A stretch of 64,000 bases of DNA from Ranitomeya imitator (GCF_032444005.1 NC_091284.1:19344001-19408000), one strand, 5' to 3'; shown: positions 2,112-34,368, numbered from the stretch's first letter. The notes: generated by a model from the sequence alone, not told the origin. A program made the numbers and translations.

Positions 2112-2562
2112 TATATATAATACTTATGCATGACTATAAGCTGTGTGAGGGCTTGTGTTTTGTTACGGGCTGAATAATAATTTTAATTATTCCATTAATT
2201 CAACCACACAGTGTACTAAAAATAGAAATGAATATCCAAATGATGAAAAATTGTCTTCCATGCCACTGCTGCTTTATTAGTAAGATTATACATACATGCT
2301 AGCCACCTTAGGGAGAGACCCAAGTTGGGCTAAATGTAGCGGGACGAAAGAGACCGAAAAGCCCTCTACTTAAAGGAAATACATAGTGGATGCTTTCCTG
2401 AAACGGAAAGTACTTGCAAGCAGCATAATACAAAGAATAGCAGGTTTACCCAGAATCCTTTGCAGTAGGCGGAGCTATGCAAATCATCTCTTTCCACCCC
2501 TGTCTAATCCACAGCGCTTGGAATCGCCAAGCGTGCAATGCTGCGGATTAGTTTCTAAATTT

Positions 2563-2647
2563 ACACAGCCAACCAATTCCTACCTGTGGACACGTGTTTC
2601 GGGCTTTAGGCCCTCATCAGCACAGGGCTGGAATTGGTTGGCTGTAT
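2563..2647 (-). ncRNA. Type I hammerhead ribozyme, copy 1 (predicted cleavage GUC| between 2589 and 2588)
   Basis: Minus 2626->2583: CCUGUG CUGAUGA GGGC CUAAA GCCC GAAA CACGU GUC CACAGG. Full CUGANGA/GAAA/NUH core, 6-bp stem I, 4-bp stem II, palindromic stem III (ACACGUGU). Stem I extended by 18 bp (2647-2630 with 2580-2563, one G.U) beyond an AGC/UA internal loop. Confidence 0.93.
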
Positions 2648-2946
2648 GGAGTGGGGCTCGGTGAGCAAGCGATACATACATGCTAGCCACCTTAGGGAGA
2701 GACCCAAGTTGGGCTAAATGTAGCGGGACGAAAGAGACCGAAAAGCCCTCTACTTAAAGGAAATACATAGTGGATGCTTTCCTGAAACGGAAAGTACTTG
2801 CAAGCAGCATAATACAAAGAATAGCAGGTTTACCCAGAATCCTTTGCAGTAGGCGGAGCTATGCAAATCATCTCTTTCCACCCCTGTCTAATCCACAGCG
2901 CTTGGAATCGCCAAGCGTGCAATGCTGCGGATTAGTTTCTAAATTT

Positions 2947-3031
2947 ACACAGCCAACCAATTCCTACCTGTGGACACGTGTTTCGGGCTTTAGGCCCTCA
3001 TCAGCACAGGGCTGGAATTGGTTGGCTGTAT
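2947..3031 (-). ncRNA. Type I hammerhead ribozyme, copy 2 (cleavage between 2973 and 2972)
   Basis: Same sequence as copy 1, offset +384. Confidence 0.93.
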
Positions 3032-3074
3032 GGAGTGGGGCTCGGTGAGCAAGCGATACATACATGCTAGCCAC

Positions 3075-3085
3075 CTTAGGGAGAG
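3075..3085 (-). promoter_or_regulatory. PSE-like motif CTCTCCCTAAG (also 2307-2317, 2691-2701, 3459-3469)
   Basis: Resembles Xenopus U1/U2 PSE cores as I recall them (CTCTCCTTATG / CTCTCCCCATG; from memory, verify). Lies ~45-60 nt upstream of the hammerhead 5' arm and ~160 nt downstream of the octamer on the minus strand. Confidence 0.5.
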
Positions 3086-3213
3086 ACCCAAGTTGGGCTA
3101 AATGTAGCGGGACGAAAGAGACCGAAAAGCCCTCTACTTAAAGGAAATACATAGTGGATGCTTTCCTGAAACGGAAAGTACTTGCAAGCAGCATAATACA
3201 AAGAATAGCAGGT

Positions 3214-3252
3214 TTACCCAGAATCCTTTGCAGTAGGCGGAGCTATGCAAAT
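3214..3252. promoter_or_regulatory. snRNA-type distal element: Staf/ZNF143 (SPH) site plus octamer (also 2446-2484 and 2830-2868)
   Basis: TTACCCAGAATCCTTTGCA (3214-3232) is 18/19 to the SPH consensus YYWCCCRNMATSCMYYRCR; perfect ATGCAAAT at 3245-3252; AGGCGGAG between them. Confidence 0.7.
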
Positions 3253-3330
3253 CATCTCTTTCCACCCCTGTCTAATCCACAGCGCTTGGAATCGCCAAGC
3301 GTGCAATGCTGCGGATTAGTTTCTAAATTT

Positions 3331-3415
3331 ACACAGCCAACCAATTCCTACCTGTGGACACGTGTTTCGGGCTTTAGGCCCTCATCAGCACAGGGCTGGA
3401 ATTGGTTGGCTGTAT
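3331..3415 (-). ncRNA. Type I hammerhead ribozyme, copy 3 (cleavage between 3357 and 3356)
   Basis: Same sequence as copy 1, offset +768. Confidence 0.93.
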
Positions 3416-3584
3416 GGAGTGGGGCTCGGTGAGCAAGCGATACATACATGCTAGCCACCTTAGGGAGAGACCCAAGTTGGGCTAAATGTAGCGGGACGAA
3501 AGAGACCGAAAAGCCCTCTACTTAAAGGAAATACATAGTGGATGCTTTCCTGAAACGGAAAGTAAGTAAGATTAGTAAGATTAT

Positions 3585-4150
3585 GTCATCCCAGAGCTAA
3601 ATGATCAGCTACACTGTTCAGTACTGTTATATAATGACCCCAGTGATGTTGCTTTATAATAAATGCTTATATCATCTCAGAGCTGTGTTCACAGTTACAC
3701 TGCTCAATTCTGCTGTATAATATTCCCCATGCTGCTGCTTTCTAGAAAGTGTTTATTGAACCTCAGAGCTGTATTCACAGATACACTGCTCAGTTGTCCT
3801 GCTGTGTAATGTCCACCACGAGGCTGCTTTCTAATAAGCGTTTATCTCACCTCAAAGCTGCAGGCACACATACGCTGCTCAGTACTGCTGTATATTGTCC
3901 TCCATTTTGCTTCTGGTTCTGAACATCTGCTAAATAGATAGACAAGAGCAGGAATCCCTCACGTCTGTGTGTGCTGTTTACGGGAGAGATCACAGCACCT
4001 AATCTCTACCCACCAGCTCAAAGATATTAAAAAATGTACAAATAGAACTGATGAAAACTTAAAGATACAATTAATATAATGGTTACAAATAGTGTTATTC
4101 CTCATGTGCACACAAATGACAGCTTCTTCTGACCAGTTAGCTGCAAAAGC
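3585..4150. repeat. Non-autonomous dispersed repeat with internal ~86-bp diverged units; host of the retrozyme insertion (left part ~2200-2287)
   Basis: cagagct...cagctacactgctcagt...ctgtataat motif recurs at 3592, 3678, 3764, 3853; same family at 16880-17880. Confidence 0.6.
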
Positions 4151-5459: not shown

Positions 5460-7062
5460 CAGTGGGGCAAAAAAGTATTTAGTCAGTCAGCAATAGTGCA
5501 AGTTCCACCACTTAAAAAGATGAGAGGCGTCTGTAATTTACATCATAGGTAGACCTCAACTATGGGAGACAAACTGAGAGAAAAAAATCCAGAAAATCAC
5601 ATTGTCTGTTTTTTTAACATTTTATTTGCATATTATGGTGGAAAATAAGTATTTGGTCAGAAACAAACAATCAAGATTTCTGGCTCTCACAGACCTGTAA
5701 CTTCTTCTTTAAGAGTCTCCTCTTTCCTCCACTCATTACCTGTAGTAATGGCACCTGTTTAAACTTGTTATTAGTATAAAAAGACACCTGTGCACACCCT
5801 CAAACAGTCTGACTCCAGACTCCACTATGGTGAAGACCAAAGAGCTGTCAAAGGACACCAGAAACAAAATTGTAGCCCTGCACCAGGCTGGGAAGACTGA
5901 ATCTGCAATAGCCAACCAGCTTGGAGTGAAGAAATCAACAGTGGGAGCAATAATTAGAAAATGGAAGACATACAAGACCACTGATAATCTCCCTCGATCT
6001 GGGGCTCCACGCAAAATCCCACCCCGTGGGGTCAGAATGATCACAAGAACGGTGAGCAAAAATCCCAGAACCACGCGGGGGGACCTAGTGAATGAACTGC
6101 AGAGAGCTGGGACCAATGTAACAAGGCCTACCATAAGTAACACACTACACCACCATGGACTCAGATCCTGCAGTGCCAGACGTGTCCCACTGCTTAAGCC
6201 AGTACATGTCCGGGCCCGTCTGAAGTTTGCTAGAGAGCATTTGGATGATCCAGAGGAGTTTTGGGAGAATGTCCTATGGTCTGATGAAACCAAACTGGAA
6301 CTGTTTGGTAGAAACACAACTTGTCGTGTTTGGAGGAAAAAGAATACTGAGTTGCATCCATCAAACACCATACCTACTGTAAAGCATGGTGGTGGAAACA
6401 TCATGTTTTGGGGCTGTTTCTCTGCAAAGGGGCCAGGACGACTGATCCGGGTACATGAAAGAATGAATGGGGCCATGTATCGTGAGATTTTGAGTGCAAA
6501 CCTCCTTCCATCAGCAAGGGCATTGAAGATGAAACGTGGCTGGGTCTTTCAACATGACAATGATCCAAAGCACACCGCCAGGGCAATGAAAGAGTGGCTT
6601 CGTAAGAAGCATTTCAAGGTCCTGGAGTGGCCTAGCCAGTCTGCAGATCTCAACCCTATAGAAAACCTTTGGAGGGAGTTGAAAGTCCGTGTTGCCAAGC
6701 GAAAAGCCAAAAACATCACTGCTCTAGAGGAGATCTGCATGGAGGAATGGGCCAACATACCAACAACAGTGTGTGGCAACCTTGTGAAGACTTACAGAAA
6801 ACGTTTGACCTCTGTCATTGCCAACAAAGGATATATTACAAAGTATTGAGATGAAATTTTGTTTCTGACCAAATACTTATTTTCCACCATAATATGCAAA
6901 TAAAATGTTAAAAAAACAGACAATGTGATTTTCTGGATTTTTTTTTCTCAGTTTGTCTCCCATAGTTGAGGTCTACCTATGATGTAAATTACAGACGCCT
7001 CTCATCTTTTTAAGTGGTGGAACTTGCACTATTGCTGACTGACTAAATACTTTTTTGCCCCA

Positions 7063-7094: not shown

Positions 7095-7540
7095 CCTAAC
7101 CCAGAGTTTGGAAAGAGAGAGACATGAAGGGGTCAGAGGCATCAGGAGAAGGACAGGATGGTCTGGACCTGGTGGAGATAGGTAGGTTTGGAGGGGGGCT
7201 GAGGAGTGTGGAATGGGGTGAATGAGTCTGGAGGGTACAGAGAGGTCAGTAGATATCAGAGGCGTTTGTAGGGAACAAAGATGGTTGTGGGGGGGCAGGA
7301 TGTCTAGTGGGTGCAGGAGGAGTACAGAGGGGTTTTGGAGGAGACCAGAGGACTCTGGAGGGTACAGAGGAGTCAGTAGAGATCAGACATGTCTGTAGGG
7401 AGCAAAGGTGTCTGGAGAAAGTAAAGGGTATGGAGGAGACAGAGGCATCTGGTGGGGGACAGAGAGGCCTGGAGGTAACAGAAGTGTTTCAAGGAGCACG
7501 TAGGGGTTAAAGGAGACCAGAGTTTTCTGGAGGGACTGAT

Positions 7541-8068
7541 GAGTTTGGGTGGGACAGACGTATCTGGAGAGGAGAAGTATCTACAGGAGGTAGAGGTATC
7601 TGGAGGGGACAGAGGAGTTTGGGTGGAACAGAGGTATCTGGAGAGGATAAGTATCTACAGGAGGTAGAGGTATCTGGAGGGGAGAAAGGAGTTTGGGTGG
7701 GACAGAGGTATCTGGAGAGGAAAAGTGTCTACAGGAGGTAGAGGTATCTGGAGGGGACAGAAGAGTTTGGGTGGGACAGAGGTATCTAGAGAGGAGAAGT
7801 ATCTACAGGAGGTAGAGGTATCTGGAGGGGACAGAGGAGTTTGGGTGGGACAGAGGTATCTGGAGAGGAGAAGTATCTACAGGAGGTAGAGGTATCTGGA
7901 GGGGACAGAGGAGTTTGGGTGGGACAGACGTATCTGGAGAGGAGAAGTATCTACAGGAGGTAGAGGTATCTGGAGGGGACAGAGGAGTTTGGGTGGGACA
8001 GACGTATCTGGAGAGGAGAAGTATCTACAGGAGGTAGAGGTATCTGGAGGGGGCTGAGGAGTTTAGAG
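7541..8068. repeat. 74-bp purine-rich minisatellite, ~7 copies, with decayed upstream flank from ~7130
   Basis: gagtttgggtgggacagaggtatctggagaggagaagtatctacaggaggtagaggtatctggaggggacagag repeated at 74-bp period (7541, 7615...). Confidence 0.9.
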
Positions 8069-10733: not shown

Positions 10734-11941
10734 TGTGACGCTGGCTAGTCACGTCTCATGGAGAAGCCATGAGACAGAGGAGTAAAGGTGTGTGGGATCA
10801 AATACCAGGAATGAACATCAAAGGCAAAGGGGCTAGACAAGTGAATTGTCAAAAGGAAAAGTTCAGGCAACAAAGATCAGAGTACGTCAAAGGCAAAGGG
10901 GCAAGACAAACAAATAGTCAAAAGACAAAGTCTGAGGTCAGGCAACAAAGATCAGAATACGTCAAAGGCAAAGGGGTAAGACAAACAAATAGTCAAAAGG
11001 CAAAGTCTGAGGTCAGGCAACAAAGATCAGAGTATGTCAAAGGCAAAGGGGCTAGACAAGTGAATAGTCAAAAGGAAAAGTTCAGGCAACAAAGATCAGA
11101 GTACGTCAAAGGCAAAGGGGCAGGAGAAACAAATAGTCAAAAAACAAAGTCTGAGGTCAGGCAACAAAGATCAGAATACGTCAAAGGCAAAGGGGTAAGA
11201 CAAACAAATAGTCAAAAGGCAAAGTCTGAGGTCAGGCAACAAAGATCAGAGTATGTCAAAGGCAAAGGGGCTAGACAAGTGAATAGTCAAAAGGAAAAGT
11301 TCAGGCAACAAAGATCAGAGTACGTCAAAGGCAAAGGGGCAGGAGAAACAAATAGTCAAAAAACAAAGTCTGAGGTCAGGCAACAAAGATCAGAATACGT
11401 CAAAGGCAAAGGGGTAAGACAAACAAATAGTCAAAAGTCTGAGGTCAGGCAACAAAGATCAGAGTATGTCAAAGCCAAAAGGGCAAGACAAACAAATAGT
11501 CAAAAGGCAAAGTCTTATGTCAGGCTACAAAGATCAAAGCAGGGGCAAGACAAACGAATAGTCAAAAGGCAAAGTCCAAGGTCAGGCAACAAAGATCAGA
11601 AGAGCAGAACACAAAGCAAGCAGAACACAGAGCACAAGGAACACATACCACTGAGTAAAGCTATGATTAGCAATGGTCTGACCGTTATCAGCTAGCTAAA
11701 TAGCCAGGCAATCACTCAGAAAGGATGAAACCTGGAGTAAACTCAGCAGGCCCAGATTGATTATACTGCTGGACAATCCTTAATTTGCATGTTGATAGCC
11801 CAGCATGCCCAAGCCCTTGATTTGGTGGCCAGGCTATTCCACTCACAAAACTGACAGCCCAGCATGCCCCTGAAATCCATAGGGTGGCCGTTCTTTCACT
11901 CACTACATCCATAGGACACTGTGAGTGGCAGAATCATGACA
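10734..11941. mobile_element. Probable solo LTR (Gypsy-like) with internal tandem expansion
   Basis: TGTGAC...ATGACA termini; composition typical of vertebrate Gypsy LTRs; no exact TSD found (gtccc / ttcca). Confidence 0.5.
10817..11600. repeat. 75/75/69-bp higher-order tandem repeat (219-bp period) inside the LTR-like element
   Basis: Units visible in DNA and in the 308-aa translation (RQQRSEYVKGKG... 25/25/23 aa, ~3 cycles). Confidence 0.9.
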
Positions 11942-16879: not shown

Positions 16880-17880
16880 GAGATACACATGCAAAGTAAA
16901 AGAAAATCTCGTTCCGTGTTGGATTCACAGATACACTGTTTGGTACTGCTGTATAATGTCCTCCATGTTGCTTTTGAATATGTGCTAGTAATAGAGAGGA
17001 GAACAGGAATCCCTCATTTCAGTCTGTGAAATACATAATTTCAGCTAGTCACTCTAAGTGTCTCTTCTCAGAGCTGTATTCACTACTGCACTGTTCAGTA
17101 CTCCTATATAACATCTCGAATGTTTGTTAGAAACAGAGAAGAGAGCAGTATTCCCTCATTTATATTGTGGAAGGCATCATAGCAGCTAGTTTCCACTCAC
17201 ACGTGATTATTTCACCTTAGAGCTATAATCACAGCTACACTGCTCAGTGCTTCTGTATAATATACTCCATGCAGCTGCTGGCTCTGAACATGAACTGCAT
17301 AGGAAAAGAGAGCAAGAATATCTCATATCTGTGTGCATTGTGTATCTGAGATATCATAGCCACTAGTCTCCACTCACACTAAGTGTTTATTTAACCTCAG
17401 AGCTACATTCACAGCTACACTGCTCAGTACTTCTGTATAATATATCCCATGCTGCTGCTGGCTCTGAACATGAACTTCATAGGAAAAGAGAGCAGGAATC
17501 CCTAATGTCTGTGTGCACTGTGTATCTGAGATATCACAGCCACTAGTCTCCACTCATACTGTGTTTATTTAACCTCGGAGCTATATTCACAGCTACACTG
17601 CTCAGTACTTCTATGTAATATCCTCCATTCTGTTGCTGGCTCAGAATATAAGGTGCGTAGGAAAAGAGAGCAGGAATCCCTCATGTTTGTGTGTGCTGTG
17701 CATGGAAGATATCATAGCCACTAGTCTCCACTCACTAGCTCAGAGACAACTAAAAATAGCCGTACAGTCTGCAAAGGGTAAAGATGGTGAAAAAAGCAAA
17801 ATACAAGTCATACAATGGCCAGAAATAATGTTATTCCTCATGCACGCACAGTTCCCTGAAATGGCAAGTATGCCTTAACT
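16880..17880. repeat. Second copy of the 3585-4150 dispersed family, here with ~180-bp internal units
   Basis: cagctacactgctcagt at 17232, 17412, 17590; shared gagcaggaatccctca and gttattcctcatg motifs; ends near TTAA at ~17876. Confidence 0.65.
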
Positions 17881-18794: not shown

Positions 18795-18874
18795 CTGCAA
18801 ATCACATCATAACCACAGAATGGCCACATAGGGGTGGACATATCACTGGTGTAACCTGTCCAGCCACAGCACCC

Positions 18875-21800
18875 AAAGAGGTAAGGGGGCAACTAACACC
18901 TCCAAAGCTAAAGGTAAGGGGGCGACTACCACCTCCAAAGCTAAAGGTAAGGGGGCAACTAACACCTCCAAAGCTAAAGGTAAGGGGGCAACTAACACCT
19001 CCAAAGCAAATGGTAAGGGGGCGACTAACACCTCCAAAGCTAAAGGTAAGGGGCAACTAACACCTCCAAAGCAAATGGTAAGGGGGCGACTAACACCTCC
19101 AAAGCTAAAGGTAAGGGGGCGACTAACACCTCCAAAGCTAAAGGTAAGGGGGCGACTAACACCTCCAAAGCTAAAGGTGAGGGGGCGACTAACACCTCCA
19201 AAGCTAAAGGTGAGGGGGCAACCAACACCTCCAAAGCTAAAGGTAAGGGGCAACTAACACCTCCAAAGCTAAAGGTAAGGGGGCGACTAACACCTCCAAA
19301 GCTAAAGGTAAGGGGGCAACTAACACCTCCAAAGCAAATGGTAAGGGGGCGACTAACACCTCCAAAGCAAATGGTAAGGGGGCGACTAACACCTCCAAAG
19401 CTAAAGGTAAGGGGGCGACTAACACCTCCAAAGCTAAAGGTAAGGGGCAACTAACACCTCCAAAGCTAAAGGTAAGGGGGCAACTAACACCTCCAAAGCA
19501 AATGGTAAGGGGGCGACTAACACCTCCAAAGCTAAAGGTAAGGGGGCAACTAACACCTCCAAAGCAAATGGTAAGGGGGCGACTAACACCTCCAAAGCTA
19601 AAGGTAAGGGGGCGACTAACACCTCCAAAGCTAAAGGTAAGGGGGCGACTAACACCTCCAAAGCTAAAGGTAAGGGGGCGACTAACACCTCCAAAGCTAA
19701 AGGTAAGGGGGCGACTAACACCTCCAAAGCTAAAGGTAAGGGGGCGACTAACACCTCCAAAGTAAAAGGTGAGGGGGCAACTAACACCTCCAAAGCTAAA
19801 GGTAAGGGGGCAACTAACACCTCCAAAGCTAAAGGTAAGGGGGCAACTAACACCTCCAAAGCAAATGGTAAGGGGGCGACTAACACCTCCAAAGCTAAAG
19901 GTAAGGGGGCAACTAACACCTCCAAAGCTAAAGGTAAGGGGCGACTACCACCTCCAAAGCTAAAGGTAAGGGGGCGACTAACACCTCCAAAGCTAAAGGT
20001 AAGGGGGCGACTAACACCTCCAAAGCTAAAGGTAAGGGGGCGACTAACACCTCCAAAGCTAAAGGTAAGGGGGCGACTACCACCTCCAAAGCTAAAGGTA
20101 AGGGGGCGACTAACACCTCCAAAGCTAAAGGTAAGGGGGCGACTAACACCTCCAAAGCTAAAGGTAAGGGGGCGACTAACACCTCCAAAGTAAAAGGTGA
20201 GGGGGCAACTAACACCTCCAAAGCTAAAGGTAAGGGGGCAACTAACACCTCCAAAGCTAAAGGTAAGGGGGCGACTAACACCTTCAAAGCTAAAGGTAAG
20301 GGGCAACTAACACCTCCAAAGCTAAAGGTAAGGGGCAACTAACACCTCCAAAGCTAAAGGTAACAGGCGACTACCACCTCCAAAGCTAAAGGTAAGGGGC
20401 AACTAACACCTCCAAAGCTAAAGGTAAGGGGCAACTAACACCTCCAAAGCTAAAGGTAAGGGGGCAACTAACACCTCCAAAGCAAAAGGTAAGGGGCGAC
20501 TACCACCTCCAAATCTAAAGGTAAGGGGCGACTACCACCTCCAAAGCTAAAGGTAAGGGGGCGACTAACATCTCCAAAGCTAAAGGTAAGGGGGCGACTA
20601 ACACCTCCAAAGCTAAAGGTAAGGGGGCGACTACCACCTCCAAAGCTAAAGGTAAGGGGCAACTAACACCTCCAAAGCAAAAGGTAAGGGGGCGACTAAC
20701 ACCTCCAAATCTAAAGGTAAGGGGCAACTAACACCTCCAAAGCAAAAGGTAAGGGGCGACTACCACCTCCAAATCTAAAGGTAAGGGGCGACTACCACCT
20801 CCAAAGCTAAAGGTAAGGGGGGCGACTAACACCTCCAAAGCTAAAGGTAAGGGGGCGACTACCACCTCCAAAGCAAAAGGTAAGGGGGGCGACTAACACC
20901 TCCAAAGCTAAAGGTAAGGGGGCGACTACCACCTCCAAAGCAAAAGGTAAGGGGCGACTACCACCTCCAAATCTAAAGGTAAGGGGCGACTACCACCTCC
21001 AAAGCTAAAGGTAAGGGGGCGACTAACACCTTCAAAGCTAAAGGTAAGGGGGCAACTAACACCTCCAAAGCTAAAGGTAAGGGGGCAACTAACACCTCCA
21101 AAGCTAAAGGTAAGGGGGCGACTACCACCTCCAAAGCAAATGGTAAGGGGGCGACTACCACCTCCAAAGCTAAAGGTAAGGGGGCGACTAACACCTCCAA
21201 AGCAAATGGTAAGGGGGCGACTACCACCTCCAAAGCTAAAGGTAAGAGGCGACTACCACCTCCAAAGCTAAAGGTAAGGGGCAACTAACACCTCCAAAGC
21301 TAAAGGTAAGGGGCGACTACCACCTCCGAAGCAAAAGGTAAGGGGCGACTACCACCTCCAAAGCTAAAGGTAAGGGGCAACTAACACCTCCAAAGCTAAA
21401 GGTAAGGGGCAACTAACACCTCCAAAGCTAAAGGTAAGGGGCAACTAACAACTCCAAAGCTAAAGGTAAGGGGCGACTACCACCTCCGAAGCAAAAGGTA
21501 AGGGGCGACTACCACCTCCAAAGTAAAAGGTAAGGGGGCGACTAACACCTCCAAAGCTAAAGGTAAGGGGGCGACTACCACCTCCAAAGCTAAAGGTAAG
21601 GGGGCGACTACCACCTCCGAAGCAAAAGGTACGGGGCGACTACCACCTCCGAAGCAAAAGGTAAGGGGGCGACTACGACCTCCAAAGCAAAAGGTAAGGG
21701 GCAACTACCACCTCCAAAGCAAAAGGTAAGGGGGCGACTACCACCTCCGAAGCAAAAGGTACGGGGCGACTACGACCTCCAAAGCAAAAGGTACGGGGCG

Positions 21801-24800
21801 ACTACGTCCTCCAAAGCAAAAGGTAAGGGGCGACTACCACCTCCAAAGCAAAAGGTAAGGGGCGACTACCACCTCCAAAGCAAAAGGTACGGGGCGACTA
21901 CCACCTCCAAAGCAAAAGGTAAGGGGCGACTAACACCTCCAAAGCTAAAGGTAAGGGGGCGACTACCACCTCCAAAGCTAAAGGTAAGGGGGCGACTACC
22001 ACCTCCGAAGCAAAAGGTACGGGGCGACTACCACCTCCGAAGCAAAAGGTAAGGGGGCGACTACGACCTCCAAAGCAAAAGGTAAGGGGCAACTACCACC
22101 TCCAAAGCAAAAGGTAAGGGGGCGACTACCACCTCCGAAGCAAAAGGTACGGGGCGACTACGACCTCCAAAGCAAAAGGTACGGGGCGACTACGTCCTCC
22201 AAAGCAAAAGGTAAGGGGCGACTACCACCTCCGAAGCAAAAGGTAAGGGGCGACTACCACCTCCAAAGCAAAAGGAACGGGGCGACTACCACCTCCAAAG
22301 CAAAAGGTAAGGGGCGACTACCACCTCCGAAGCAAAAGGTAAGGGGCGACTACCACCTCCAAAGTAAAAGGTAAGGGGCGACTAACACCTCCAAAGCTAA
22401 AGGTAAGGGGGCGACTACCACCTCCAAAGCAAATGGTAAGGGGGCGACTACCACCTCCAAAGCTAAAGGTAAGGGGGCGACTAACACCTCCAAAGCAAAT
22501 GGTAAGGGGGCGACTACCACCTCCAAAGCTAAAGGTAAGAGGCGACTACCACCTCCAAAGCTAAAGGTAAGGGGCAACTAACACCTCCAAAGCTAAAGGT
22601 AAGGGGCGACTACCACCTCCGAAGCAAAAGGTAAGGGGCGACTACCACCTCCAAAGCTAAAGGTAAGGGGCAACTAACACCTCCAAAGCTAAAGGTAAGG
22701 GGCAACTAACACCTCCAAAGCTAAAGGTAAGGGGCAACTAACAACTCCAAAGCTAAAGGTAAGGGGCGACTACCACCTCCGAAGCAAAAGGTAAGGGGCG
22801 ACTACCACCTCCAAAGTAAAAGGTAAGGGGGCGACTAACACCTCCAAAGCTAAAGGTAAGGGGGCGACTACCACCTCCAAAGCTAAAGGTAAGGGGGCGA
22901 CTACCACCTCCGAAGCAAAAGGTACGGGGCGACTACCACCTCCGAAGCAAAAGGTAAGGGGGCGACTACGACCTCCAAAGCAAAAGGTAAGGGGCAACTA
23001 CCACCTCCAAAGCAAAAGGTAAGGGGGCGACTACCACCTCCGAAGCAAAAGGTACGGGGCGACTACGACCTCCAAAGCAAAAGGTACGGGGCGACTACGT
23101 CCTCCAAAGCAAAAGGTAAGGGGCGACTACCACCTCCAAAGCAAAAGGTAAGGGGCGACTACCACCTCCAAAGCAAAAGGTACGGGGCGACTACCACCTC
23201 CAAAGCAAAAGGTAAGGGGCGACTAACACCTCCAAAGCTAAAGGTAAGGGGGCGACTACCACCTCCAAAGCTAAAGGTAAGGGGGCGACTACCACCTCCG
23301 AAGCAAAAGGTACGGGGCGACTACCACCTCCGAAGCAAAAGGTAAGGGGGCGACTACGACCTCCAAAGCAAAAGGTAAGGGGCAACTACCACCTCCAAAG
23401 CAAAAGGTAAGGGGGCGACTACCACCTCCGAAGCAAAAGGTACGGGGCGACTACGACCTCCAAAGCAAAAGGTACGGGGCGACTACGTCCTCCAAAGCAA
23501 AAGGTAAGGGGCGACTACCACCTCCGAAGCAAAAGGTAAGGGGCGACTACCACCTCCAAAGCAAAAGGTACGGGGCGACTACCACCTCCAAAGCAAAAGG
23601 TAAGGGGCGACTACCACCTCCGAAGCAAAAGGTAAGGGGCGACTACCACCTCCAAAGTAAAAGGTAAGGGGCGACTACCACCTCCGAAGCAAAAGGTAAG
23701 GGGCGACTATGACCTCCAAAGCAAAAGGTAATGGGCGACTACCACCTCCAAAGCAAAATGTAAGGGGCGACTACCACCTCCGAAGCAAAAGGTACGGGAC
23801 GACTACCACCTCCAAAGCAAAAGGTAAGGGGCGACTACCACCTCCAAAGTAAAAGGTAAAGGGCGACTACCACCTCCAAAGTAAAAGGTAAGGGGCGACT
23901 AACACCTCCAAAGCTAAAGGTAAGGGGCGACTACCACCTCCAAAGTAAAAGGTAAGGGGCACTACCACCTCCGAAGCAAAAGGTAAGGGGCGACTACCAC
24001 CTCCAAAGTAAAAGGTAAGGGGGCGACTACCACCTCCAAAGCTAAAGGTAAGGGGCGACTACCACCTCCAAAGTAAAAGGTAAGGGGCACTACCACCTCC
24101 GAAGCAAAAGGTAAGGGGCGACTACCACCTCCAAAGTAAAAGGTAAGGGGGCGACTACCACCTCCGAAGCAAAAGGTAAGGGGCGACTACCACCTCCAAA
24201 GTAAAAGGTAAGGGGGCGACTACCACCTCCGAAGCAAAAGGTAAGGGGCGACTACCACCTCCAAAGCTAAAGGTAAGGGGGCAACTAACACCTCCAAAGC
24301 TAAAAGTAAGGGACGACTATCACCTCCAAAGCTAAAGGTAAGGGGGCGACTAACACCTCCAAAGCTAAAGGTAAGGGGGCGACTACCACCTCCAAAGCTA
24401 AAGGTAAGGGGGCGACTACCACCTCCAAAGCTAAAGGTAAGGGGGCGACTATCACCTCCAAAGCTAAAGGTAAGGGGGCGACTAACACCTCCAAAGCTAA
24501 AGGTAAGGGGCGACTAACACCTCCAAAGCTAAAGGTAAGGGGGCGACTAACACCTCCAAAGCAAAAGGTGAGGGGGCGACTACCACCCCCAAGGCAAAAG
24601 GTGAGGGGGCGACTACCACCTCCAAAGCTAAAGGTAAGGGGCGACTAACACCTCCAAAGCTAAAGGTAAGGGGCGACTACCACCTCCGAAGCAAAAGGTA
24701 AGGGGCGACTACCACCTCCAAAGCAAAAGGTGAGGGGGCGACTAACACCTCCAAAGCTAAAGGTAAGAGGCGACTACCACCTCCAAAGCTAAAGGTAAGG

Positions 24801-27800
24801 GGCAAGTAACACCTCCAAAGCTAAAGGTAAGGGGCAACTAACACCTCCAAAGCTAAAGGTAAGGGGCGACTACCACCTCCAAAGCTAAAGGTAAGGGGCG
24901 ACTAACACCTCCGAAGCAAAAGGTGAGGGGGCGACTACCACCTCCAAAGCTAAAGGTAAGGGGCGACTACCACCTCCAAAGTAAAAGGTAAGGGGGCGAC
25001 TACCACCTCCAAAGCTAAAGGTAAGGGGGCGACTACCACCTCCAAAGCTAAAGGTAAGGGGGCGACTACCACCTCCGAAGCAAAAGGTACGGGGCGACTA
25101 CCACCTCCGAAGCAAAAGGTAAGGGGGCGACTACGACCTCCAAAGCAAAAGGTAAGGGGCGACTACCACCTCCAAAGCAAAAGGTACGGGGCGACTACGT
25201 CCTCCAAAGCAAAAGGTAAGGGGCGACTACCACCTCCAAAGCTAAAGGTAAGGGGGCAACTAACACCTCCAAAGCTAAAAGTAAGGGACGACTATCACCT
25301 CCAAAGCTAAAGGTAAGGGGGCGACTAACACCTCCAAAGCTAAAGGTAAGGGGGCGACTACCACCTCCAAAGCTAAAGGTAAGGGGGCGACTACCACCTC
25401 CAAAGCTAAAGGTAAGGGGGCGACTATCACCTCCAAAGCTAAAGGTAAGGGGGCGACTAACACCTCCAAAGCTAAAGGTAAGGGGCGACTAACACCTCCA
25501 AAGCTAAAGGTAAGGGGCAACTAACACCTCCAAAGCTAAAGGTAAGGGGCGACTACCACCTCCGAAGCAAAAGGTAAGGGGCGACTACCACCTCCAAAGC
25601 AAAAGGTGAGGGGGCGACTAACACCTCCAAAGCTAAAGGTAAGAGGCGACTACCACCTCCAAAGCTAAAGGTAAGGGGCAAGTAACACCTCCAAAGCTAA
25701 AGGTAAGGGGCAACTAACACCTCCAAAGCTAAAGGTAAGGGGCGACTACCACCTCCAAAGCTAAAGGTAAGGGGCGACTAACACCTCCGAAGCAAAAGGT
25801 GAGGGGGCGACTACCACCTCCAAAGCTAAAGGTAAGGGGCGACTACCACCTCCAAAGTAAAAGGTAAGGGGGCGACTAACACCTCCAAAGCTAAAGGTAA
25901 GGGGGTGACTACCACCTCCAAAGCTAAAGGTAAGGGGGCGACTACCACCTCCGAAGCAAAAGGTACGGGGCGACTACCACCTCCGAAGCAAAAGGTAAGG
26001 GGGCGACTACGACCTCCAAAGCAAAAGGTAAGGGGCGACTACCACCTCCGAAGCAAAAGGTACGGGGCGACTACCACCTCCAAAGCAAAAGGTACGGGGC
26101 GACTACGTCCTCCAAAGCAAAAGGTAAGGGGCGACTACCACCTCCAAAGCAAAAGGTACGGGGCGACTACGACCTCCAAAGCAAAAGGTACGGGGCGACT
26201 ACGTCCTCCAAAGCAAAAGGTAAGGGGCGACTACCACCTCCAAAGCAAAAGGTAAGGGGCGACTACCACCTCCGAAGCAAAAGGTAAGGGGCGACTACCA
26301 CCTCCAAAGCAAAAGGTACGGGGCGACTACCACCTCCGAAGCAAAAGGTAAGGGGCGACTACCACCTCCAAAGCAAAAGGTAAGGGGGCGACTAACACCT
26401 CCAAAGCAAAAGGTACGGGGCGACTACCACCTCCAAAGCAAAAGGTAAGGGGGCGACTAACACCTCCAAAGCAAAAGGTAAGGGGCGACTATGACCTCCA
26501 AAGCAAAAGGTAAGGGGCGACTACCACCTCCAAAGCAAAAGGTACGGGGCGACTACCACCTCCAAAGCAAAAGGTACGGGGCGACTACGACCTCCAAAGC
26601 AAAAGGTAAGGGGCGACTACCACCTCCAAAGCAAAAGGTAAGGGGCGACTACCACCTCCAAAGCAAAAGGTAAGGGGCGACTACCACCTCCAAAGCAAAA
26701 GGTAAGGGGCGACTACCACCTCCAAAGCAAAAGGTAAGGGGCGACTACGACCTCCGAAGCAAAAGGTAAGGGGCGACTACCACCTCCAAAGAAATAGGTG
26801 AGGGGGCGACTAACACCTCCAAAGTAAAAGGTAAGGGGCGACTACCACCTCCAAAGTAAAAGGTAAGGGGCGACTATCACCTCCGAAGCAAAAGGTAAGG
26901 GGCGACTACCACCTCCGAAGCAAAAGGTAAGGGGGGCGACTACCACCTCCGAAGCAAAAGGTAAGGGGCGACTACCACCTCCGAAGCAAAAGGTAAGGGG
27001 CGACTACCACCTCCAAAGTAAAAGGTAAGGGGCGACTACCACCTCCGAAGCAAAAGGTAAGGGGCGACTACCACCTCCAAAGCAAAAGGTACGGGGCGAC
27101 TATGACCTCCAAAGCAAAATGTAATGGGCGACTACCACCTCCAAAGCAAAAGGTAAGGGGCGACTACCACCTCCGAAGCAAAAGGTATGGGACGACTACC
27201 ACCTCCGAAGCAAAAGGTAAGGGGCGACTACCACCTCCAAAGCAAAAGGTAAGGGGCGACTACCACCTCCAAAGTAAAAGGTAAGGGGCGACTACCACCT
27301 CCAAAGTAAAAGGTAAGGGGCGACTAACACCTCCAAAGCTAAAGGTAAGGGGCGACTACCACCTCCAAAGTAAAAGGTAAGGGGCGACTACCACCTCCGA
27401 AGCAAAAGGTAAGGGGCGACTACCACCTCCGAAGCTAAAGGTAAGGGGGCAACTAACACCTCCAAAGCTAAAAGTAAGGGACGACTATCACCTCCAAAGC
27501 TAAAGGTAAGGGGGCGACTAACACCTCCAAAGCTAAAGGTAAGGGGGCGACTACCACCTCCAAAGCTAAAGGTAAGGGGGCGACTACCACCTCCAAAGCT
27601 AAAGGTAAGGGGGCGACTAACACCTCCAAAGCTAAAGGTAAGGGGCGACTACCACCTCCAAAGCTAAAGGTAAGGGGGCAACTAACACCTCCAAAGCAAA
27701 AGGTGAGGGGGCGACTACCACCTCCAAAGCTAAAGGTAAGGGGGCGACTAACACCTCCAAAGTTAAAGGTAAGAGGCGACTACCACCTCCAAAGCTAAAG

Positions 27801-30800
27801 GTAAGGGGCGACTAACACCTCCAAAGCTAAAGGTAAGGGGCGACTACCACCTCCGAAGCAAAAGGTAAGGGGCGACTACCACCTCCAAAGCAAAAGGTGA
27901 GGGGGCGACTACCACCTCCAAAGCTAAAGGTAAGAGGCGACTACCACCTCCAAAGCTAAAGGTAAGGGGGCAACTAACACCTCCAAAGCTAAAGGTAAGG
28001 GGGCGACTACCACCTCCAAAGCTAAAGGTAAGGGGCGACTACCACCTCCGAAGCAAAAGGTGAGGGGGCGACTACCACCTCCAAAGCTAAAGGTAAGGGG
28101 CGACTACCACCTCCAAAGTAAAAGGTAAGGGGGCGACTAACACCTCCAAAGCTAAAGGTAAGGGGGCGACTACCACCTCCAAAGCTAAAGGTAAGGGGGC
28201 GACTACCACCTCCGAAGCAAAAGGTAAGGGGGCGACTACGACCTCCAAAGCAAAAGGTAAGGGGCGACTACCACCTCCGAAGCAAAAGGTACGGGGCGAC
28301 TACGACCTCCAAAGCAAAAGGTACGGGGCGACTACGTCCTCCAAAGCAAAAGGTAAGGGGCGACTACCACCTCCAAAGCAAAAGGTAAGGGGCGACTACC
28401 ACCTCCGAAGCAAAAGGTAAGGGGCGACTACCACCTCCAAAGCAAAAGGTACGGGGCGACTACCACCTCCAAAGCAAAAGGTAAGGGGCGACTACCACCT
28501 CCGAAGCAAAAGGTAAGGGGCGACTAACACCTCCAAAGCAAAAGGTAAGGGGCGACTACCACCTCCGAAGCAAAAGGTAAGGGGCGACTACCACCTCCAA
28601 AGCAAAAGGTAAGGGGCGACTACCACCTCCGAAGCAAAAGGTAAGGGGCGACTACCACCTCCAAAGCAAAAGGTAAGGGGCGACTACCAGCTCCAAAGCA
28701 AAAGGTACGGGGCGACTACCACCTCCAAAGCAAAAGGTACGGGGCGACTACGACCTCCAAAGCAAAAGGTAAGGGGCGACTACCACCTCCAAAGCAAAAG
28801 GTACGGGGCGACTACCACCTCCAAAGCAAAAGGTATGGGGCGACTACGACCTCCGAAGCAAAAGGTAAGGGGCGACTACCACCTCCAAAGAAATAGGTGA
28901 GGGGGCGACTAACACCTCCAAAGTAAAAGGTAAGTGGGCGACTACCACCTCCAAAGTAAAAGGTAAGGGGCGACTATCACCTCCGAAGCAAAAGGTAAGG
29001 GGCGACTACCACCTCCAAAGCAAAAGGTAAGGGGGGCGACTACCACCTCCGAAGCAAAAGGTAAGGGGCGACTACCACCTCCAAAGCAAAAGGTAAGGGG
29101 CGACTACCAGCTCCAAAGCAAAAGGTACGGGGCGACTACCACCTCCATAGCAAAAGGTACGGGGCGACTACGTCCTCCGAAGCAAAAGGTAAGGGGCGAC
29201 TACCACCTCCAAAGCAAAAGGTACGGGGCGACTACCACCTCCAAAGCAAAAGGTATGGGGCGACTACGACCTCCGAAGCAAAAGGTAAGGGGCGACTACC
29301 ACCTCCAAAGCAAAAGGTACGGGGCGACTACCACCTCCAAAGCAAAAGGTAATGGGCGACTACCACCTCCGAAGCAAAAGGTAAGGGGGGCGACTACCAC
29401 CTCCGAAGCAAAAGGTAAGGGGCGACTACCACCTCCAAAGCAAAAGGTACGGGGCGACTACGACCTCCAAAGCAAAAGGTAATGGGCGACTACCACCTCC
29501 AAAGCAAAAGGTACGGGGCGACTACCACCTCCAAAGCAAAAGGTATGGGGCGACTACGACCTCCGTAGCAAAAGGTAAGAGGCGACTACCACCTCCAAAG
29601 CAAAAGGTACGGGGCGACTACCACCTCCAAAGCAAAAGGTAATGGGCGACTACCACCTCCAAAGCAAAAGGTATGGGGCGACTACGACCTCCGAAGCAAA
29701 AGGTAAGAGGCGACTACCACCTCCAAAGCAAAAGGTACGGGGCGACTACCACCTCCAAAGCAAAAGGTATGGGGCGACTACGACCTCCGAAGCAAAAGGT
29801 AAGGGGGCGACTACCACCTCCAAAGCAAAAGGTACGGGGCGACTACCACCTCCAAAGCAAAAGGTAATGGGCGACTACCACCTCCGAAGCAAAAGGTAAG
29901 GGGGGCGACTACCACCTCCGAAGCAAAAGGTAAGGGGCGACTACCACCTCCAAAGCAAAAGGTAGGGGGGGACTACGACCTCCAAAGCAAAAGGTAATGG
30001 GACGACTACCACCTCCGAAGCAAAAGGTACGGGACGACTACCACCTCCGAAGCAAAAGGTACGGGACGACTACCACCTCCGAAGCAAAAGGTAAGGGGCG
30101 ACTACCACCTCCGAAGCAAAAGGTAAGGGGGGCGACTACCACCTCCGAAGCAAAAGGTAAGGGGCGACTACCACCTCCAAAGCAAAAGGTACGGGGCGAC
30201 TACGACCTCCAAAGCAAAAGGTAATGGGCGACTACCACCTCCGAAGCAAAAGGTACGGGACGACTACCACCTCCGAAGCAAAAGGTACGGGACGACTACC
30301 ACCTCCGAAGCAAAAGGTACGGGACGACTACCACCTCCGAAGCAAAAGGTAAGGGGCGACTACCACCTCCAAAGCAAAAGGTAAGGGGCGACTATCACCT
30401 CCGAAGCAAAAGGTAAGGGGCGACTACCACCTCCGAAGCAAAAGGTAAGGGGCGACTACCACCTCCAAAGCAAAAGGTACAGGGCGACTACCACCTCCAA
30501 AGCAAAAGGTATGGGGCGACTACGACCTCCGAAGCAAAAGGTAAGGGGCGACTACCACCTCCAAAGAAATAGGTGAGGGGGCGACTAACACCTCCAAAGT
30601 AAAAGGTAAGGGGGCGACTACCACCTCCAAAGTAAAAGGTAAGGGGCGACTATCACCTCCGAAGCAAAAGGTAAGGGGCGACTACCACCTCCGAAGCAAA
30701 AGGTAAGGGGGGCGACTACCACCTCCGAAGCAAAAGGTAAGGGGCGACTACCACCTCCAAAGCAAAAGGTACGGGGCGACTACGACCTCCAAAGCTAAAG

Positions 30801-33800: not shown

Positions 33801-34368
33801 CTACCACCTCCGAAGCAAAAGGTAAGGGGCGACTACCACCTCCAAAGCAAAAGGTACGGGGCGACTACGACCTCCAAAGCAAAAGGTACGGGGCGACTAC
33901 GACCTCCAAAGCAAAAGGTAAGGGGCGACTACCACCTCCAAAGCAAAAGGTACGGGGCGACTACCACCTCCAAAGCAAAAGGTAAGGGGGCGACTACCAC
34001 CTCCAAAGTAAAAGGTAAGGGGCGACTATCACCTCCGAAGCAAAAGGTAAGGGGCGACTACCACCCTCAAAGTAAAAGGTAAGGGGCGACTACCACCTCC
34101 AAAGTAAAAGGTAAGGGGCGACTACCACCTCCAAAGTAAAAGGTAAGGGGCGACTACCACCTCCAAAGTAAAAGGTAAGGGGCGACTACCACCTCCAAAG
34201 TAAAAGCTAAGGGGGCGACTACCACCTCCGAAGCAAAAGGTAAGGGGCGACTACCACCTCCGAAGCAAAAGGTAAGGGGCGACTACCACCTCCTAAGTAA
34301 AAGGTAAGGGGGCGACTACCACCTCCAAAGTAAAAGGTAAGGGGCGACTACCACCTCCAAAGTAAAAG
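18875..34368. repeat. 32/33-bp minisatellite array, ~15.5 kb, ~480 units
   Basis: Unit GGGG(G)CGACTA(A/C)CACCTCC(A/G)AAG(C/T)(T/A)AAAGGTAA; higher-order duplications with 1293-bp and 975-bp periods. Confidence 0.99.

What the first reader, a model, noticed from the sequence alone, without database searches (positions are those of the whole stretch)
2288..3564. Tandem 384-bp retrozyme with a hammerhead ribozyme in every unit
Seen: each unit has, on the minus strand, a complete hammerhead core (CUGAUGA, GGGC/GCCC stem II, GAAA, GUC cleavage triplet) closed by a 6+18-bp stem I. The one non-Watson-Crick pair in the stem I extension is G.U only on the minus strand, which independently points to that strand as the RNA. 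Known: newt satellite 2 and metazoan non-LTR retrozymes are short tandem units with type I hammerheads, processed to monomers and circRNAs, and thought to be mobilised by Penelope-like elements. Inference: this is an anuran member that would release 384-nt monomers (3356->2973, 2972->2589) able to circularise. I do not know of a description of this particular family but cannot run a search to confirm novelty.
Basis: partly seen in the sequence, partly recalled or inferred. Interest (0 to 1): 0.92.

Follow-up and report, generated by a model that had tools for sequence, protein, structure and literature searches.

The report
Frog hammerhead retrozyme insertion, 384-bp units
This is a real, very young insertion of a small non-coding mobile element (a non-LTR "retrozyme") whose 384-bp units each encode a self-cleaving hammerhead RNA; the class is already described in amphibians, frogs included, so it is a clean new example and not a new kind of element.

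Summary
Window 2288-3564 is a 384-bp tandem array of 3.33 copies with no differences between copies. The minus strand carries three complete type I hammerheads: an intact core, a 6-bp plus 18-bp helix I, a 4-bp helix II, and a 2-bp helix III with a palindromic ACGU loop. Rfam scores them as Hammerhead_HH9 at 30.1 bits, below the gathering score of 52. The motif fits all 12 pairs of an alignment of same-architecture hammerheads that shows strong covariation.

The array is one insertion. It has a 12-14 bp target-site duplication, it interrupts an 86-89 bp host repeat, and its ends lie out of register with the cleavage site. The palindromic helix III predicts cleavage as a double hammerhead.

This is the known metazoan non-LTR retrozyme class (Cervera & de la Peña 2020; Li et al. 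2026 report it in 7 of 7 amphibians and 57 Xenopus families). This scan has about 94 retrozyme notes on this same genome. I rate it a new member of a known kind, of modest interest.

Two side observations may be worth more:
- Independent insertions seen in public contigs end at the same unit position (298-301).
- One run holds dense A-to-G hypermutated variants of either strand, which looks like ADAR editing.

Cleavage, circular RNA and the mobilising enzyme remain untested.

The parts
2288..3564 (-). Whole retrozyme insertion: 1277 bp, or 3.33 head-to-tail units of 384 bp. It runs on the minus strand from unit position 177 to unit position 301 (position 1 is the first nucleotide after the cleavage site).
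2973..3356 (-). First full monomer between two cleavage sites (384 nt).
2589..2972 (-). Second full monomer, identical to the first. Linear MFE is -149.7 kcal/mol (z -7.4); circular MFE is -143.9 (z -6.1), with 67% of bases paired.
3334..3406 (-). Hammerhead 1 (type I). Cleavage falls between 3357 and 3356.
   Evidence: (HH9, 30.1 bits)
2950..3022 (-). Hammerhead 2. The parts are: outer stem I 3031-3014 with 2964-2947; inner stem I 3010-3005 with 2972-2967; CUGAUGA 3004-2998; helix II 2997-2994 with 2988-2985; loop 2 2993-2989; GAAA 2984-2981; palindrome ACACGUGU 2981-2974; C17 at 2973.
2566..2638 (-). Hammerhead 3. Cleavage falls between 2589 and 2588.
3571..3582 (-). Upstream copy of the target-site duplication AATCTTACTAAT. 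It is 14 bp if the preceding AT (3584-3583) is counted.
2276..2287 (-). Downstream copy of the target-site duplication AATCTTACTAAT. The preceding AT (2289-2288) is also the last two bases of the element, a microhomology.
3565..3570 (-). 6-nt filler CTTACT at the 5' junction. It comes neither from the element nor from the empty site, and it repeats the inner hexamer of the duplication.
3245..3252 (-). Octamer ATTTGCAT at unit positions 105-112, also at 2861-2868 and 2477-2484. It is a possible snRNA-type enhancer element and only a lead.
3606..3894 (-). Host 86-89 bp repeat that the element inserted into. The repeat continues across the reconstructed empty site.

Best explanation
This is a recent single insertion of a non-autonomous, non-LTR retrozyme.

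Inferred life cycle:
1. A multimeric minus-strand transcript is cut after GUC in each unit by type I hammerheads.
2. Helix III is only 2 bp, but its loop makes the palindrome ACACGUGU, so the hammerheads probably act in pairs as double hammerheads.
3. Cutting releases 384-nt monomers. Their ends are held together by the 6+18-bp helix I, and a host RNA ligase can close them into a highly paired circle.
4. A reverse transcriptase supplied in trans, most likely from a Penelope-like element, copies the circle or a multimer more than three times round. It starts at a fixed site near unit position 300.
5. The cDNA is integrated by target-primed reverse transcription, which duplicates 12-14 bp of target.

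Shown here: the array, the motif, the duplication, the empty site, the predicted folds and the recurring 3' terminus.

Inferred from the literature on the class: cleavage, circularisation, the rolling-circle cDNA and the identity of the reverse transcriptase.
For: - Array of 3.33 identical units.
- Three complete hammerheads on one strand, none expected by chance. Rfam HH9 gives E 3.8e-05.
- The motif satisfies all 12 pairs of an alignment with 25 same-architecture hammerheads from environmental contigs. That alignment is 96.3% paired, has compensatory changes at 9 of 12 pairs, and no shuffle out of 500 reaches its covariation score.
- The architecture equals the published 'canonical metazoan' type I hammerhead: helix I 6 bp, helix II 4 bp, helix III 1-2 bp with a palindromic loop, active as dimers (PMC4209133, PMC7229834).
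- The dimer cofold is -63.3 kcal/mol against 2 x -26.3, with an 8-bp intermolecular helix III. In the MFE fold of a multimer, the palindromes of two hammerheads pair with each other.
- The monomer fold is far more stable than shuffles (z -7.4 linear, -6.1 circular) and leaves the core free. The plus strand folds less well (-130.3 against -143.9).
- An exact 12-bp duplication directly flanks the array, and the reconstructed empty site continues the host repeat.
- There is no ORF over 92 aa in the array. GC is 48.4%.
- Contigs from other runs join the unit to unrelated sequence at + strand 3057 (two contigs) and 2675. These equal unit positions 300 and 298, against 301 in this window. The 5' junctions vary (positions 177, 211, 249).
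- Near-identical copies occur in runs from at least seven organism labels and nine studies.
Against: - No experiment or raw-read evidence shows cleavage, circles or even transcription. All runs were kept as contigs and none is on record as RNA.
- The Rfam score is below the gathering threshold.
- The nucleotides of the internal loop of helix I (AGC/UA) differ from the usual UAC/U, so the tertiary contact that speeds cleavage may be weakened.
- 8 of 9 Xenopus retrozyme dimers tested in vitro did not cleave (10.64898/2026.07.22.740005).
- All available copies are about 99.7% identical, so there is no within-family covariation or selective conservation of the core.
- No Penelope-like element is present in the window.
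- A 1.33-unit insertion later enlarged by unequal crossing-over would look the same.
Confidence: 0.85

Rival explanations
1. It is a fragment of an autonomous Penelope-like element: tandem pseudo-LTRs left after loss of the ORF, not an independent non-autonomous retrozyme family.
For: PLEs insert as partial tandems, are 5' truncated, make short duplications and carry hammerheads in their pLTRs (PMC3846280, PMC8969392, PMC4209133). Xenopus retrozyme families are sister to PLE pLTRs (10.64898/2026.07.22.740005). In run X9 the last 52 nt before the terminus (unit positions 249-300) are joined on both sides to other sequence of more than 1 kb at high depth. That could be a larger element sharing this tail.
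Against: There is no RT or GIY-YIG ORF in the window; the only recognisable ORF nearby is a Tc1/mariner transposase. The 3.33 units are contiguous between the duplications, with no internal region. PLE hammerheads are usually minimal variants without helix III or loop contacts (PMC7761336), whereas this one is canonical.
Confidence: 0.07
2. It is a retrozyme, but it is mobilised by a LINE (for example an L2- or CR1-type element that recognises a specific 3' tail) and not by a Penelope-like element.
For: The fixed 3' terminus ends in a short repetitive tail (ATGTATGTAT), there is a 12-14 bp duplication, and the 5' ends vary. All are also typical of stringent LINE/SINE partnerships (my own knowledge, not tested).
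Against: Retrozymes co-occur with PLEs in 32 of 35 species and their sequences are related to pLTRs (10.64898/2026.07.22.740005). Head-to-tail multimers are a PLE hallmark (PMC8969392). PLE RT is known to start at internal, non-homologous sites (PMC11167929).
Confidence: 0.15
3. The multimer arose at the DNA level: a 1.33-unit insertion or a local duplication was expanded by unequal crossing-over or replication slippage, with no rolling-circle cDNA.
For: Li et al. 2026 favour local amplification of tandem repeats by unequal crossing-over. Expansion would preserve both the duplication and the ends.
Against: There are no differences among the 1277 bp and both junctions are intact, so any expansion must be very recent. 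The published model predicts multimeric cDNA directly (PMC7761336). Many arrays of 2-6 units are noted across this genome (unverified notes).
Confidence: 0.2
4. The hammerhead is a structural relic: the element is an ordinary short satellite or SINE-like repeat whose ribozyme no longer cleaves.
For: 8 of 9 Xenopus dimers were inactive in vitro (10.64898/2026.07.22.740005). The stem I internal loop is atypical. The 18-bp stem I extension could trap the RNA.
Against: All core positions and all three helices are intact in a family that was inserting very recently. The core is identical in contigs from organisms A, B and D.
Confidence: 0.25

Closest known systems
Metazoan non-LTR retrozymes (Cervera & de la Peña 2020, PMC7229834), especially axolotl Rtz_353 with HHR_Amex2
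   Same: Tandem units in the 170-400 bp range. One canonical type I hammerhead per unit. No LTR, PBS, PPT or ORF. GC below 50%. Duplication longer than 4 bp. Highly self-paired monomer. Helix III of 2 bp capped by a tetraloop, predicted to work as a dimer.
   Different: The unit is 384 bp against 331 or 353. Helix II is a clean 4-bp stem without the U.U mismatch described for HHR_Amex2. The stem I extension is unusually long (18 bp). The internal loop is AGC/UA. Sequence relatedness to the axolotl families could not be tested.
Xenopus non-LTR retrozyme families, including REP4_XT (Li, Clavereau & Pollet 2026, bioRxiv 10.64898/2026.07.22.740005)
   Same: An anuran host according to the scan's notes. 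It meets their operational definition: a tandem repeat with at least two consecutive units carrying a complete hammerhead with MFE below -5 kcal/mol. The array is short; most of their families have at most 7 units.
   Different: The host genome differs: one piece extends more than 631 Mb beyond this window, which is far larger than any Xenopus chromosome as I recall their sizes.
Newt/salamander satellite 2 (Epstein & Gall 1987; Coats et al. 1994, as cited in PMC7229834 and PMC2220036)
   Same: An amphibian tandem repeat of about 330 bp with a type I hammerhead that is active as a dimer. It has an internal snRNA-type promoter, and this unit has a perfect octamer at positions 105-112.
   Different: Only the octamer could be checked here, and about 0.015 is expected per unit by chance. 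No PSE could be validated, and the promoter paper was not held. Sequence homology was not tested.
Rfam Hammerhead_HH9 (RF02275), the intronic amniote hammerhead
   Same: It is the best Rfam match. It shares the core, the 6-bp helix I with an internal loop followed by a further stem, and the 4-bp helix II with an A-rich loop.
   Different: The score is 30.1 bits against a gathering score of 52. Helix III is shorter and palindromic. The context is a repeated mobile element, not a conserved intron.
Penelope-like element pLTRs
   Same: Head-to-tail partial tandems, 5' truncation, short duplications, a hammerhead, and reverse transcription starting at a defined internal site (PMC3846280, PMC11167929).
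   Different: There is no RT/GIY-YIG ORF. The hammerhead is canonical and not minimal. No 30-40 nt 'tail' or inverted pLTR was seen at this locus.

Membership tests
Hammerhead ribozyme, type I (canonical metazoan form) | Conserved core: C3-U-G-A-U-G-A9, G12-A-A14, the A15.1-U16.1 pair, and C17 before the cleavage site | tested here: met
   Read directly. The core is invariant across alignment A1.
Hammerhead ribozyme, type I (canonical metazoan form) | Three helices around the core with helix I open: helix I 6 bp, helix II 4 bp, helix III 1-2 bp with a small palindromic loop (PMC4209133) | tested here: met
   All 12 pairs are formed by the window sequence in an alignment that is 96.3% paired with 9 of 12 compensatory pairs.
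Hammerhead ribozyme, type I (canonical metazoan form) | Score at or above an Rfam hammerhead gathering threshold | tested here: not met
   No match at gathering threshold. HH9 scores 30.1 bits against 52.
Hammerhead ribozyme, type I (canonical metazoan form) | Loop 1 / loop 2 nucleotides for the tertiary contact | tested here: inconclusive
   The geometry is kept: an internal loop 6 bp from the core, and an A-rich loop 2. The letters are AGC/UA, where most relatives have UAC/U.
Hammerhead ribozyme, type I (canonical metazoan form) | Site-specific self-cleavage | not testable with these tools
   This needs in vitro transcription of monomer and dimer. The contigs cannot show RNA ends.
Non-LTR retrozyme | Short tandem units (about 170-400 bp), each with a type I hammerhead; at least two consecutive complete hammerheads | tested here: met
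   384 bp x 3.33 with three complete hammerheads.
Non-LTR retrozyme | Non-coding; no LTR, PBS or PPT; GC below 50% | tested here: met
   The longest ORF is 92 aa, starts with GTG and is repeated per unit. GC is 48.4%. Nothing lies between the duplications except the tandem units.
Non-LTR retrozyme | Insertion with a target-site duplication longer than the 4 bp of plant retrozymes | tested here: met
   12-14 bp duplication; the empty site was reconstructed in the host repeat.
Non-LTR retrozyme | Monomer RNA predicted to be stable and highly self-paired, with the hammerhead free to fold | tested here: met
   z -7.4 (linear) and -6.1 (circular), 67% of bases paired, core unpaired in the MFE fold.
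Non-LTR retrozyme | Expressed as linear and circular monomer RNA | tested here: inconclusive
   The unit is present in small runs that the tool guesses to be RNA, and in dense A-to-G variants that suggest dsRNA editing. No run is on record as RNA, and contigs cannot show circles in a tandem repeat.
Newt satellite 2 | Sequence homology to the ~330-bp satellite 2 unit | not tested
   No satellite 2 sequence was available through the tools.
Newt satellite 2 | Internal snRNA-type promoter (octamer/DSE plus PSE) | tested here: inconclusive
   One perfect octamer per unit. The PSE could not be assessed, and PMC308520 is not held.
Penelope-like element | ORF with reverse transcriptase and GIY-YIG endonuclease between pLTRs | tested here: not met
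   No such ORF in the array or the window. Pfam finds only a Tc1/mariner transposase at 5827-6849.

The most novel reading that the evidence does not exclude
Two features beyond the textbook retrozyme model may be real.

(1) New copies of this family always end at one unit position (298-301). That would mean reverse transcription starts at a fixed internal site of a circular or multimeric template, as shown in vitro for a Penelope-like element.

(2) Retrozyme RNAs of both polarities exist in this frog and are A-to-I edited almost to saturation. That would make retrozymes a major natural ADAR substrate and point to a host control of these circles.

No paper in the searched library discusses ADAR editing of retrozyme RNA.
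Probability: 0.3. Interest if true: 0.6.

Novelty: new member of a known kind. Interest (0 to 1): 0.3.

Why it matters
As an example of the class it adds little, because retrozymes are already catalogued in amphibians.

Its value is as an unusually clean 'fresh' insertion. It has zero divergence, both junctions are intact and the empty site can be reconstructed. It therefore shows directly that more than three unit lengths sit between one pair of target-site duplications, with ends unrelated to the ribozyme cut. That is what the circular-RNA/multimeric-cDNA model predicts.

If the fixed 3' terminus and the A-to-G hypermutated variants hold up, they would give testable handles on two open questions. 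The first is which enzyme mobilises animal retrozymes and where it starts. The second is how the host deals with abundant, highly paired ribozyme circles.

Tried and rejected
- **Rfam at gathering threshold** gave no hit. Only the E-value mode gave the sub-threshold HH9 match.
- **Metagenome scan**. My pattern had 12 N where this family needs 11. It therefore returned 27 contigs with same-architecture hammerheads from other, unknown eukaryotes and no copies of this family. BLAST of the unit against them matches only the 33-nt core. I used the hits only for class-level covariation.
- **Expression.** Neither run search returned a run on record as RNA, and all runs are contigs. Starts, ends, strand and circles could not be read.
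- **Explanations for the T>C / A>G contigs that I rejected:**
  - CpG decay: only 5 of 14 sites are in a TpG context.
  - An ancestral subfamily: overlapping contigs carry T>C and A>G over the same stretch.
  - Bisulfite conversion: the direction is wrong.
  - A chemical A-to-I library cannot be excluded, but it would not explain the deep unconverted contigs.
- **Newt promoter paper** PMC308520 is not held.
- **The one held supplement table** of the 2026 preprint is an oligo order form, and the amphibian species list was not found.
- **Bacterial promoter/terminator scan** is irrelevant and empty.
- **Penelope-like element in the window:** none found.
- **Complex prediction, structure and protein searches** were not used, because the element is non-coding.

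Full report
**1. The observation**

Tandem Repeats Finder reports one array at 2288-3564 with period 384, 3.3 copies, 100% matches and no indels. A script confirmed that the two full units (3356-2973 and 2972-2589 on the minus strand) are identical. The 208-nt 5' partial unit and the 301-nt 3' partial unit match them exactly, and homology stops abruptly at both ends.

The 32-nt string from CUGAUGA to GUC occurs three times, always on the minus strand, against zero expected. So does a loose hammerhead pattern, the only three matches in 64 kb.

Read on the minus strand, the motif has these parts:
- Helix I of 6 bp (CCUGUG with CACAGG).
- An internal loop AGC/UA.
- An 18-bp extension with a single U.G pair.
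- CUGAUGA.
- Helix II GGGC/GCCC closed by CUAAA.
- GAAA.
- Helix III of two pairs (A-U, C-G) closed by ACGU.
- C17.

The plus strand folds less well as a circle (-130.3 against -143.9 kcal/mol).

**2. Is it a hammerhead?**

Rfam gives nothing at gathering thresholds over the whole window. With E-value reporting on 2200-3700, the three sites match Hammerhead_HH9 end to end at 30.1 bits (gathering score 52, E 3.8e-05). So it is not a member of that Rfam family by the curated cut-off.

The architecture is exactly what Cervera and de la Peña call the canonical metazoan type I hammerhead: helix I 6 bp, helix II 4 bp, helix III 1-2 bp with a small palindromic loop, active as a dimer in tandem repeats (PMC4209133; PMC7229834 for amphibians).

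For an independent structural test I used 25 hammerheads of the same build found in environmental contigs. My pattern had one N too many, so these are other families. Aligned with the window motif (A1), the three helices are 96.3% paired. Nine of 12 pairs show compensatory changes. The covariation score is 0.726 against 0.184 in shuffles (0 of 500 reach it), and slid registers fall to 0.02-0.09. The window sequence forms all 12 pairs.

Two limits apply. The letters of the stem I internal loop differ (AGC/UA against the usual UAC/U), so the tertiary contact is uncertain. Every available copy of this family is about 99.7% identical, so no within-family covariation is possible.

**3. Dimer and monomer folds**

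The helix III region reads ACACGUGU, a perfect palindrome. Two hammerhead domains cofold at -63.3 kcal/mol against 2 x -26.3, with an 8-bp intermolecular helix III. In the MFE fold of an 861-nt multimeric transcript, the palindromes of two hammerheads pair with each other. This supports, by prediction only, the double-hammerhead mode known for newt and axolotl.

The 384-nt monomer folds at -149.7 kcal/mol (z -7.4). As a circle it folds at -143.9 (z -6.1, 67% paired). Helix I closes the molecule and the catalytic core stays unpaired.

**4. It is one insertion**

On the minus strand the element is preceded by AATCTTACTAAT plus a 6-nt filler CTTACT, and is followed directly by AATCTTACTAAT. With an AT microhomology the duplication is 14 bp.

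Removing the element, the filler and one copy of the duplication restores a sequence that continues the neighbouring 86-89 bp host repeat (AAAGCAGCAG..GCATGG..).

The element runs from unit position 177 to unit position 301. Its ends therefore have nothing to do with the cleavage site.

The following fit the published retrozyme model, in which a circular or multimeric RNA is copied into multimeric cDNA and integrated (PMC7761336):
- 3.33 identical units between one pair of duplications.
- No ORF above 92 aa.
- GC of 48.4%.

They also fit the partial tandems, 5' truncation and short duplications of Penelope-like elements (PMC3846280, PMC8969392). No PLE ORF is in the window. The only recognisable ORF nearby is an intact Tc1/mariner transposase.

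**5. Copies elsewhere**

The unit's 31-mers are held at 0.88-0.90 by small runs from organisms labelled A to F, and at 0.35-0.53 by organism G. That covers nine studies in all.

Laid on two units, contigs from organisms A, B and D cover the hammerhead without any change. The family consensus differs from this copy at one place only: 2908, unit position 65, in a hairpin loop.

Long contigs join the unit to unrelated sequence at + strand 3057 (two contigs with different flanks, organism D) and at 2675 (organism A). In unit coordinates these are positions 300 and 298, against 301 in this window (or 299 allowing for the AT). The 5' junctions lie at 177, 211 and 249. Four 3' ends within 4 nt of a 384-nt circle are very unlikely by chance: (4/384)^3 is about 1e-6.

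This suggests a fixed start of reverse transcription, which recalls the internal initiation shown for an Anolis PLE (PMC11167929).

There is a caveat. The flanking contigs in run X9 have high depth (96-171). They may be captured loci or part of a larger repeat that shares the last 52 nt.

**6. An unexpected signal**

Run X3 is from the same organism, and the tool guesses it to be RNA. It holds two near-perfect contigs. It also holds at least six short contigs that differ from the unit at 10-21 places each. Every listed difference is T>C (15 places) or A>G (9 places), and the two kinds are never mixed in one contig.

- One contig changes about 19 of 22 T.
- Several 'loose ends' are simply the unit with 10 of 12 A, or 12 of 13 T, converted.
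- The few unconverted sites tend to have a 5' G.
- Overlapping contigs carry the two kinds of change over the same stretch. That excludes an ancestral subfamily.
- The sequence context excludes CpG decay.

The pattern is A-to-G hypermutation of either strand, the signature of ADAR acting on double-stranded RNA. It would imply that both polarities are transcribed.

The density (83-100%) is above my recollection of about 50% for ADAR acting on long dsRNA. Edits fixed in DNA copies, or a chemical conversion library, therefore remain possible. The one paper in the searched library that holds both 'retrozyme' and 'ADAR' is a general circRNA review.

**7. Promoter lead**

Each unit has one perfect octamer ATTTGCAT at positions 105-112. 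About 0.015 is expected per unit, and there are 7 in the window against 2.4 expected. Newt satellite 2 is reported to use an snRNA-type promoter (cited in PMC2220036). The original paper was not available and no PSE could be validated, so this stays a lead.

**8. Comparison and verdict**

The element meets every testable defining feature of a non-LTR retrozyme. It fails only the Rfam cut-off and the PLE ORF criterion.

The class is known:
- The axolotl has more than 100,000 copies (PMC7229834).
- All seven amphibians sampled by Li et al. carry such elements.
- Xenopus frogs have 57 families.
- 8 of 9 tested Xenopus dimers did not cleave in vitro (10.64898/2026.07.22.740005).

This scan already holds about 94 retrozyme notes for this genome, with 312-, 317-, 350-353- and 384-bp units. 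Earlier notes on this same stretch had already proposed the duplication, the dimeric stem III and the promoter.

I therefore rate it a new member of a known kind, with interest 0.3. The fixed 3' terminus and the A-to-G hypermutated variants are the parts worth following.

Noticed in passing
window 2589-3356, as seen in public run X3: Short contigs of the retrozyme unit in which 83-100% of the A (or, on other contigs, of the T) are read as G (or C). The two kinds are never mixed in one contig. This is an ADAR-like hypermutation of either strand. The run type is unknown and no DNA control could be laid.
   Followed up: partly
unit positions 298-301 (window 2288; equivalents 2673-2675 and 3057 in runs X3 and X9): Independent junctions to unrelated sequence fall at the same 3' terminus of the unit. 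The 5' junctions vary (positions 177, 211, 249). In X9 the flanking contigs are themselves at high depth, so a larger repeat sharing the last 52 nt is possible.
   Followed up: partly
window 3606-3894 and 17176-17735: An 86-89 bp repeat (3.3 copies, about 75% alike) hosts the insertion. A 180-bp repeat at 17176-17735 has a consensus with clearly similar segments. They are probably parts of one older repeat family.
   Followed up: no
window 5827-6849 (+): An intact 340-aa Tc1/mariner-type transposase ORF. Pfam domains: HTH_Tnp_Tc3_2 at 1.2e-23, Sleeping Beauty HTH at 4.6e-23, DDE_3 at 3e-14.
   Followed up: partly
window 18874-34368, 38401-43239, 45024-64000: Three large satellites fill most of the window: a 32-bp unit x 479 (92% alike, strong A-over-T skew), a 19-bp unit x 260, and a 78-bp unit x 243 (96% alike) that runs off the window end. 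Long 'ORFs' at 44959-56997 lie in the 78-bp satellite, whose unit length is a multiple of three.
   Followed up: no
window 7519-8000 and 10818-11601: Further minisatellites: a 74-bp G-rich unit x 6.5 (94% alike), and a 75/219-bp A-rich unit. The latter overlaps a 308-aa ORF with no Pfam match.
   Followed up: no
loci L001-L027 (metagenome contigs): 27 environmental contigs carry canonical type I hammerheads with the same GAAACACGUGUC helix III palindrome and covarying helices I and II. L024 has two copies 1415 nt apart. They are presumably retrozymes of unsampled eukaryotes in wetland and soil metagenomes.
   Followed up: partly
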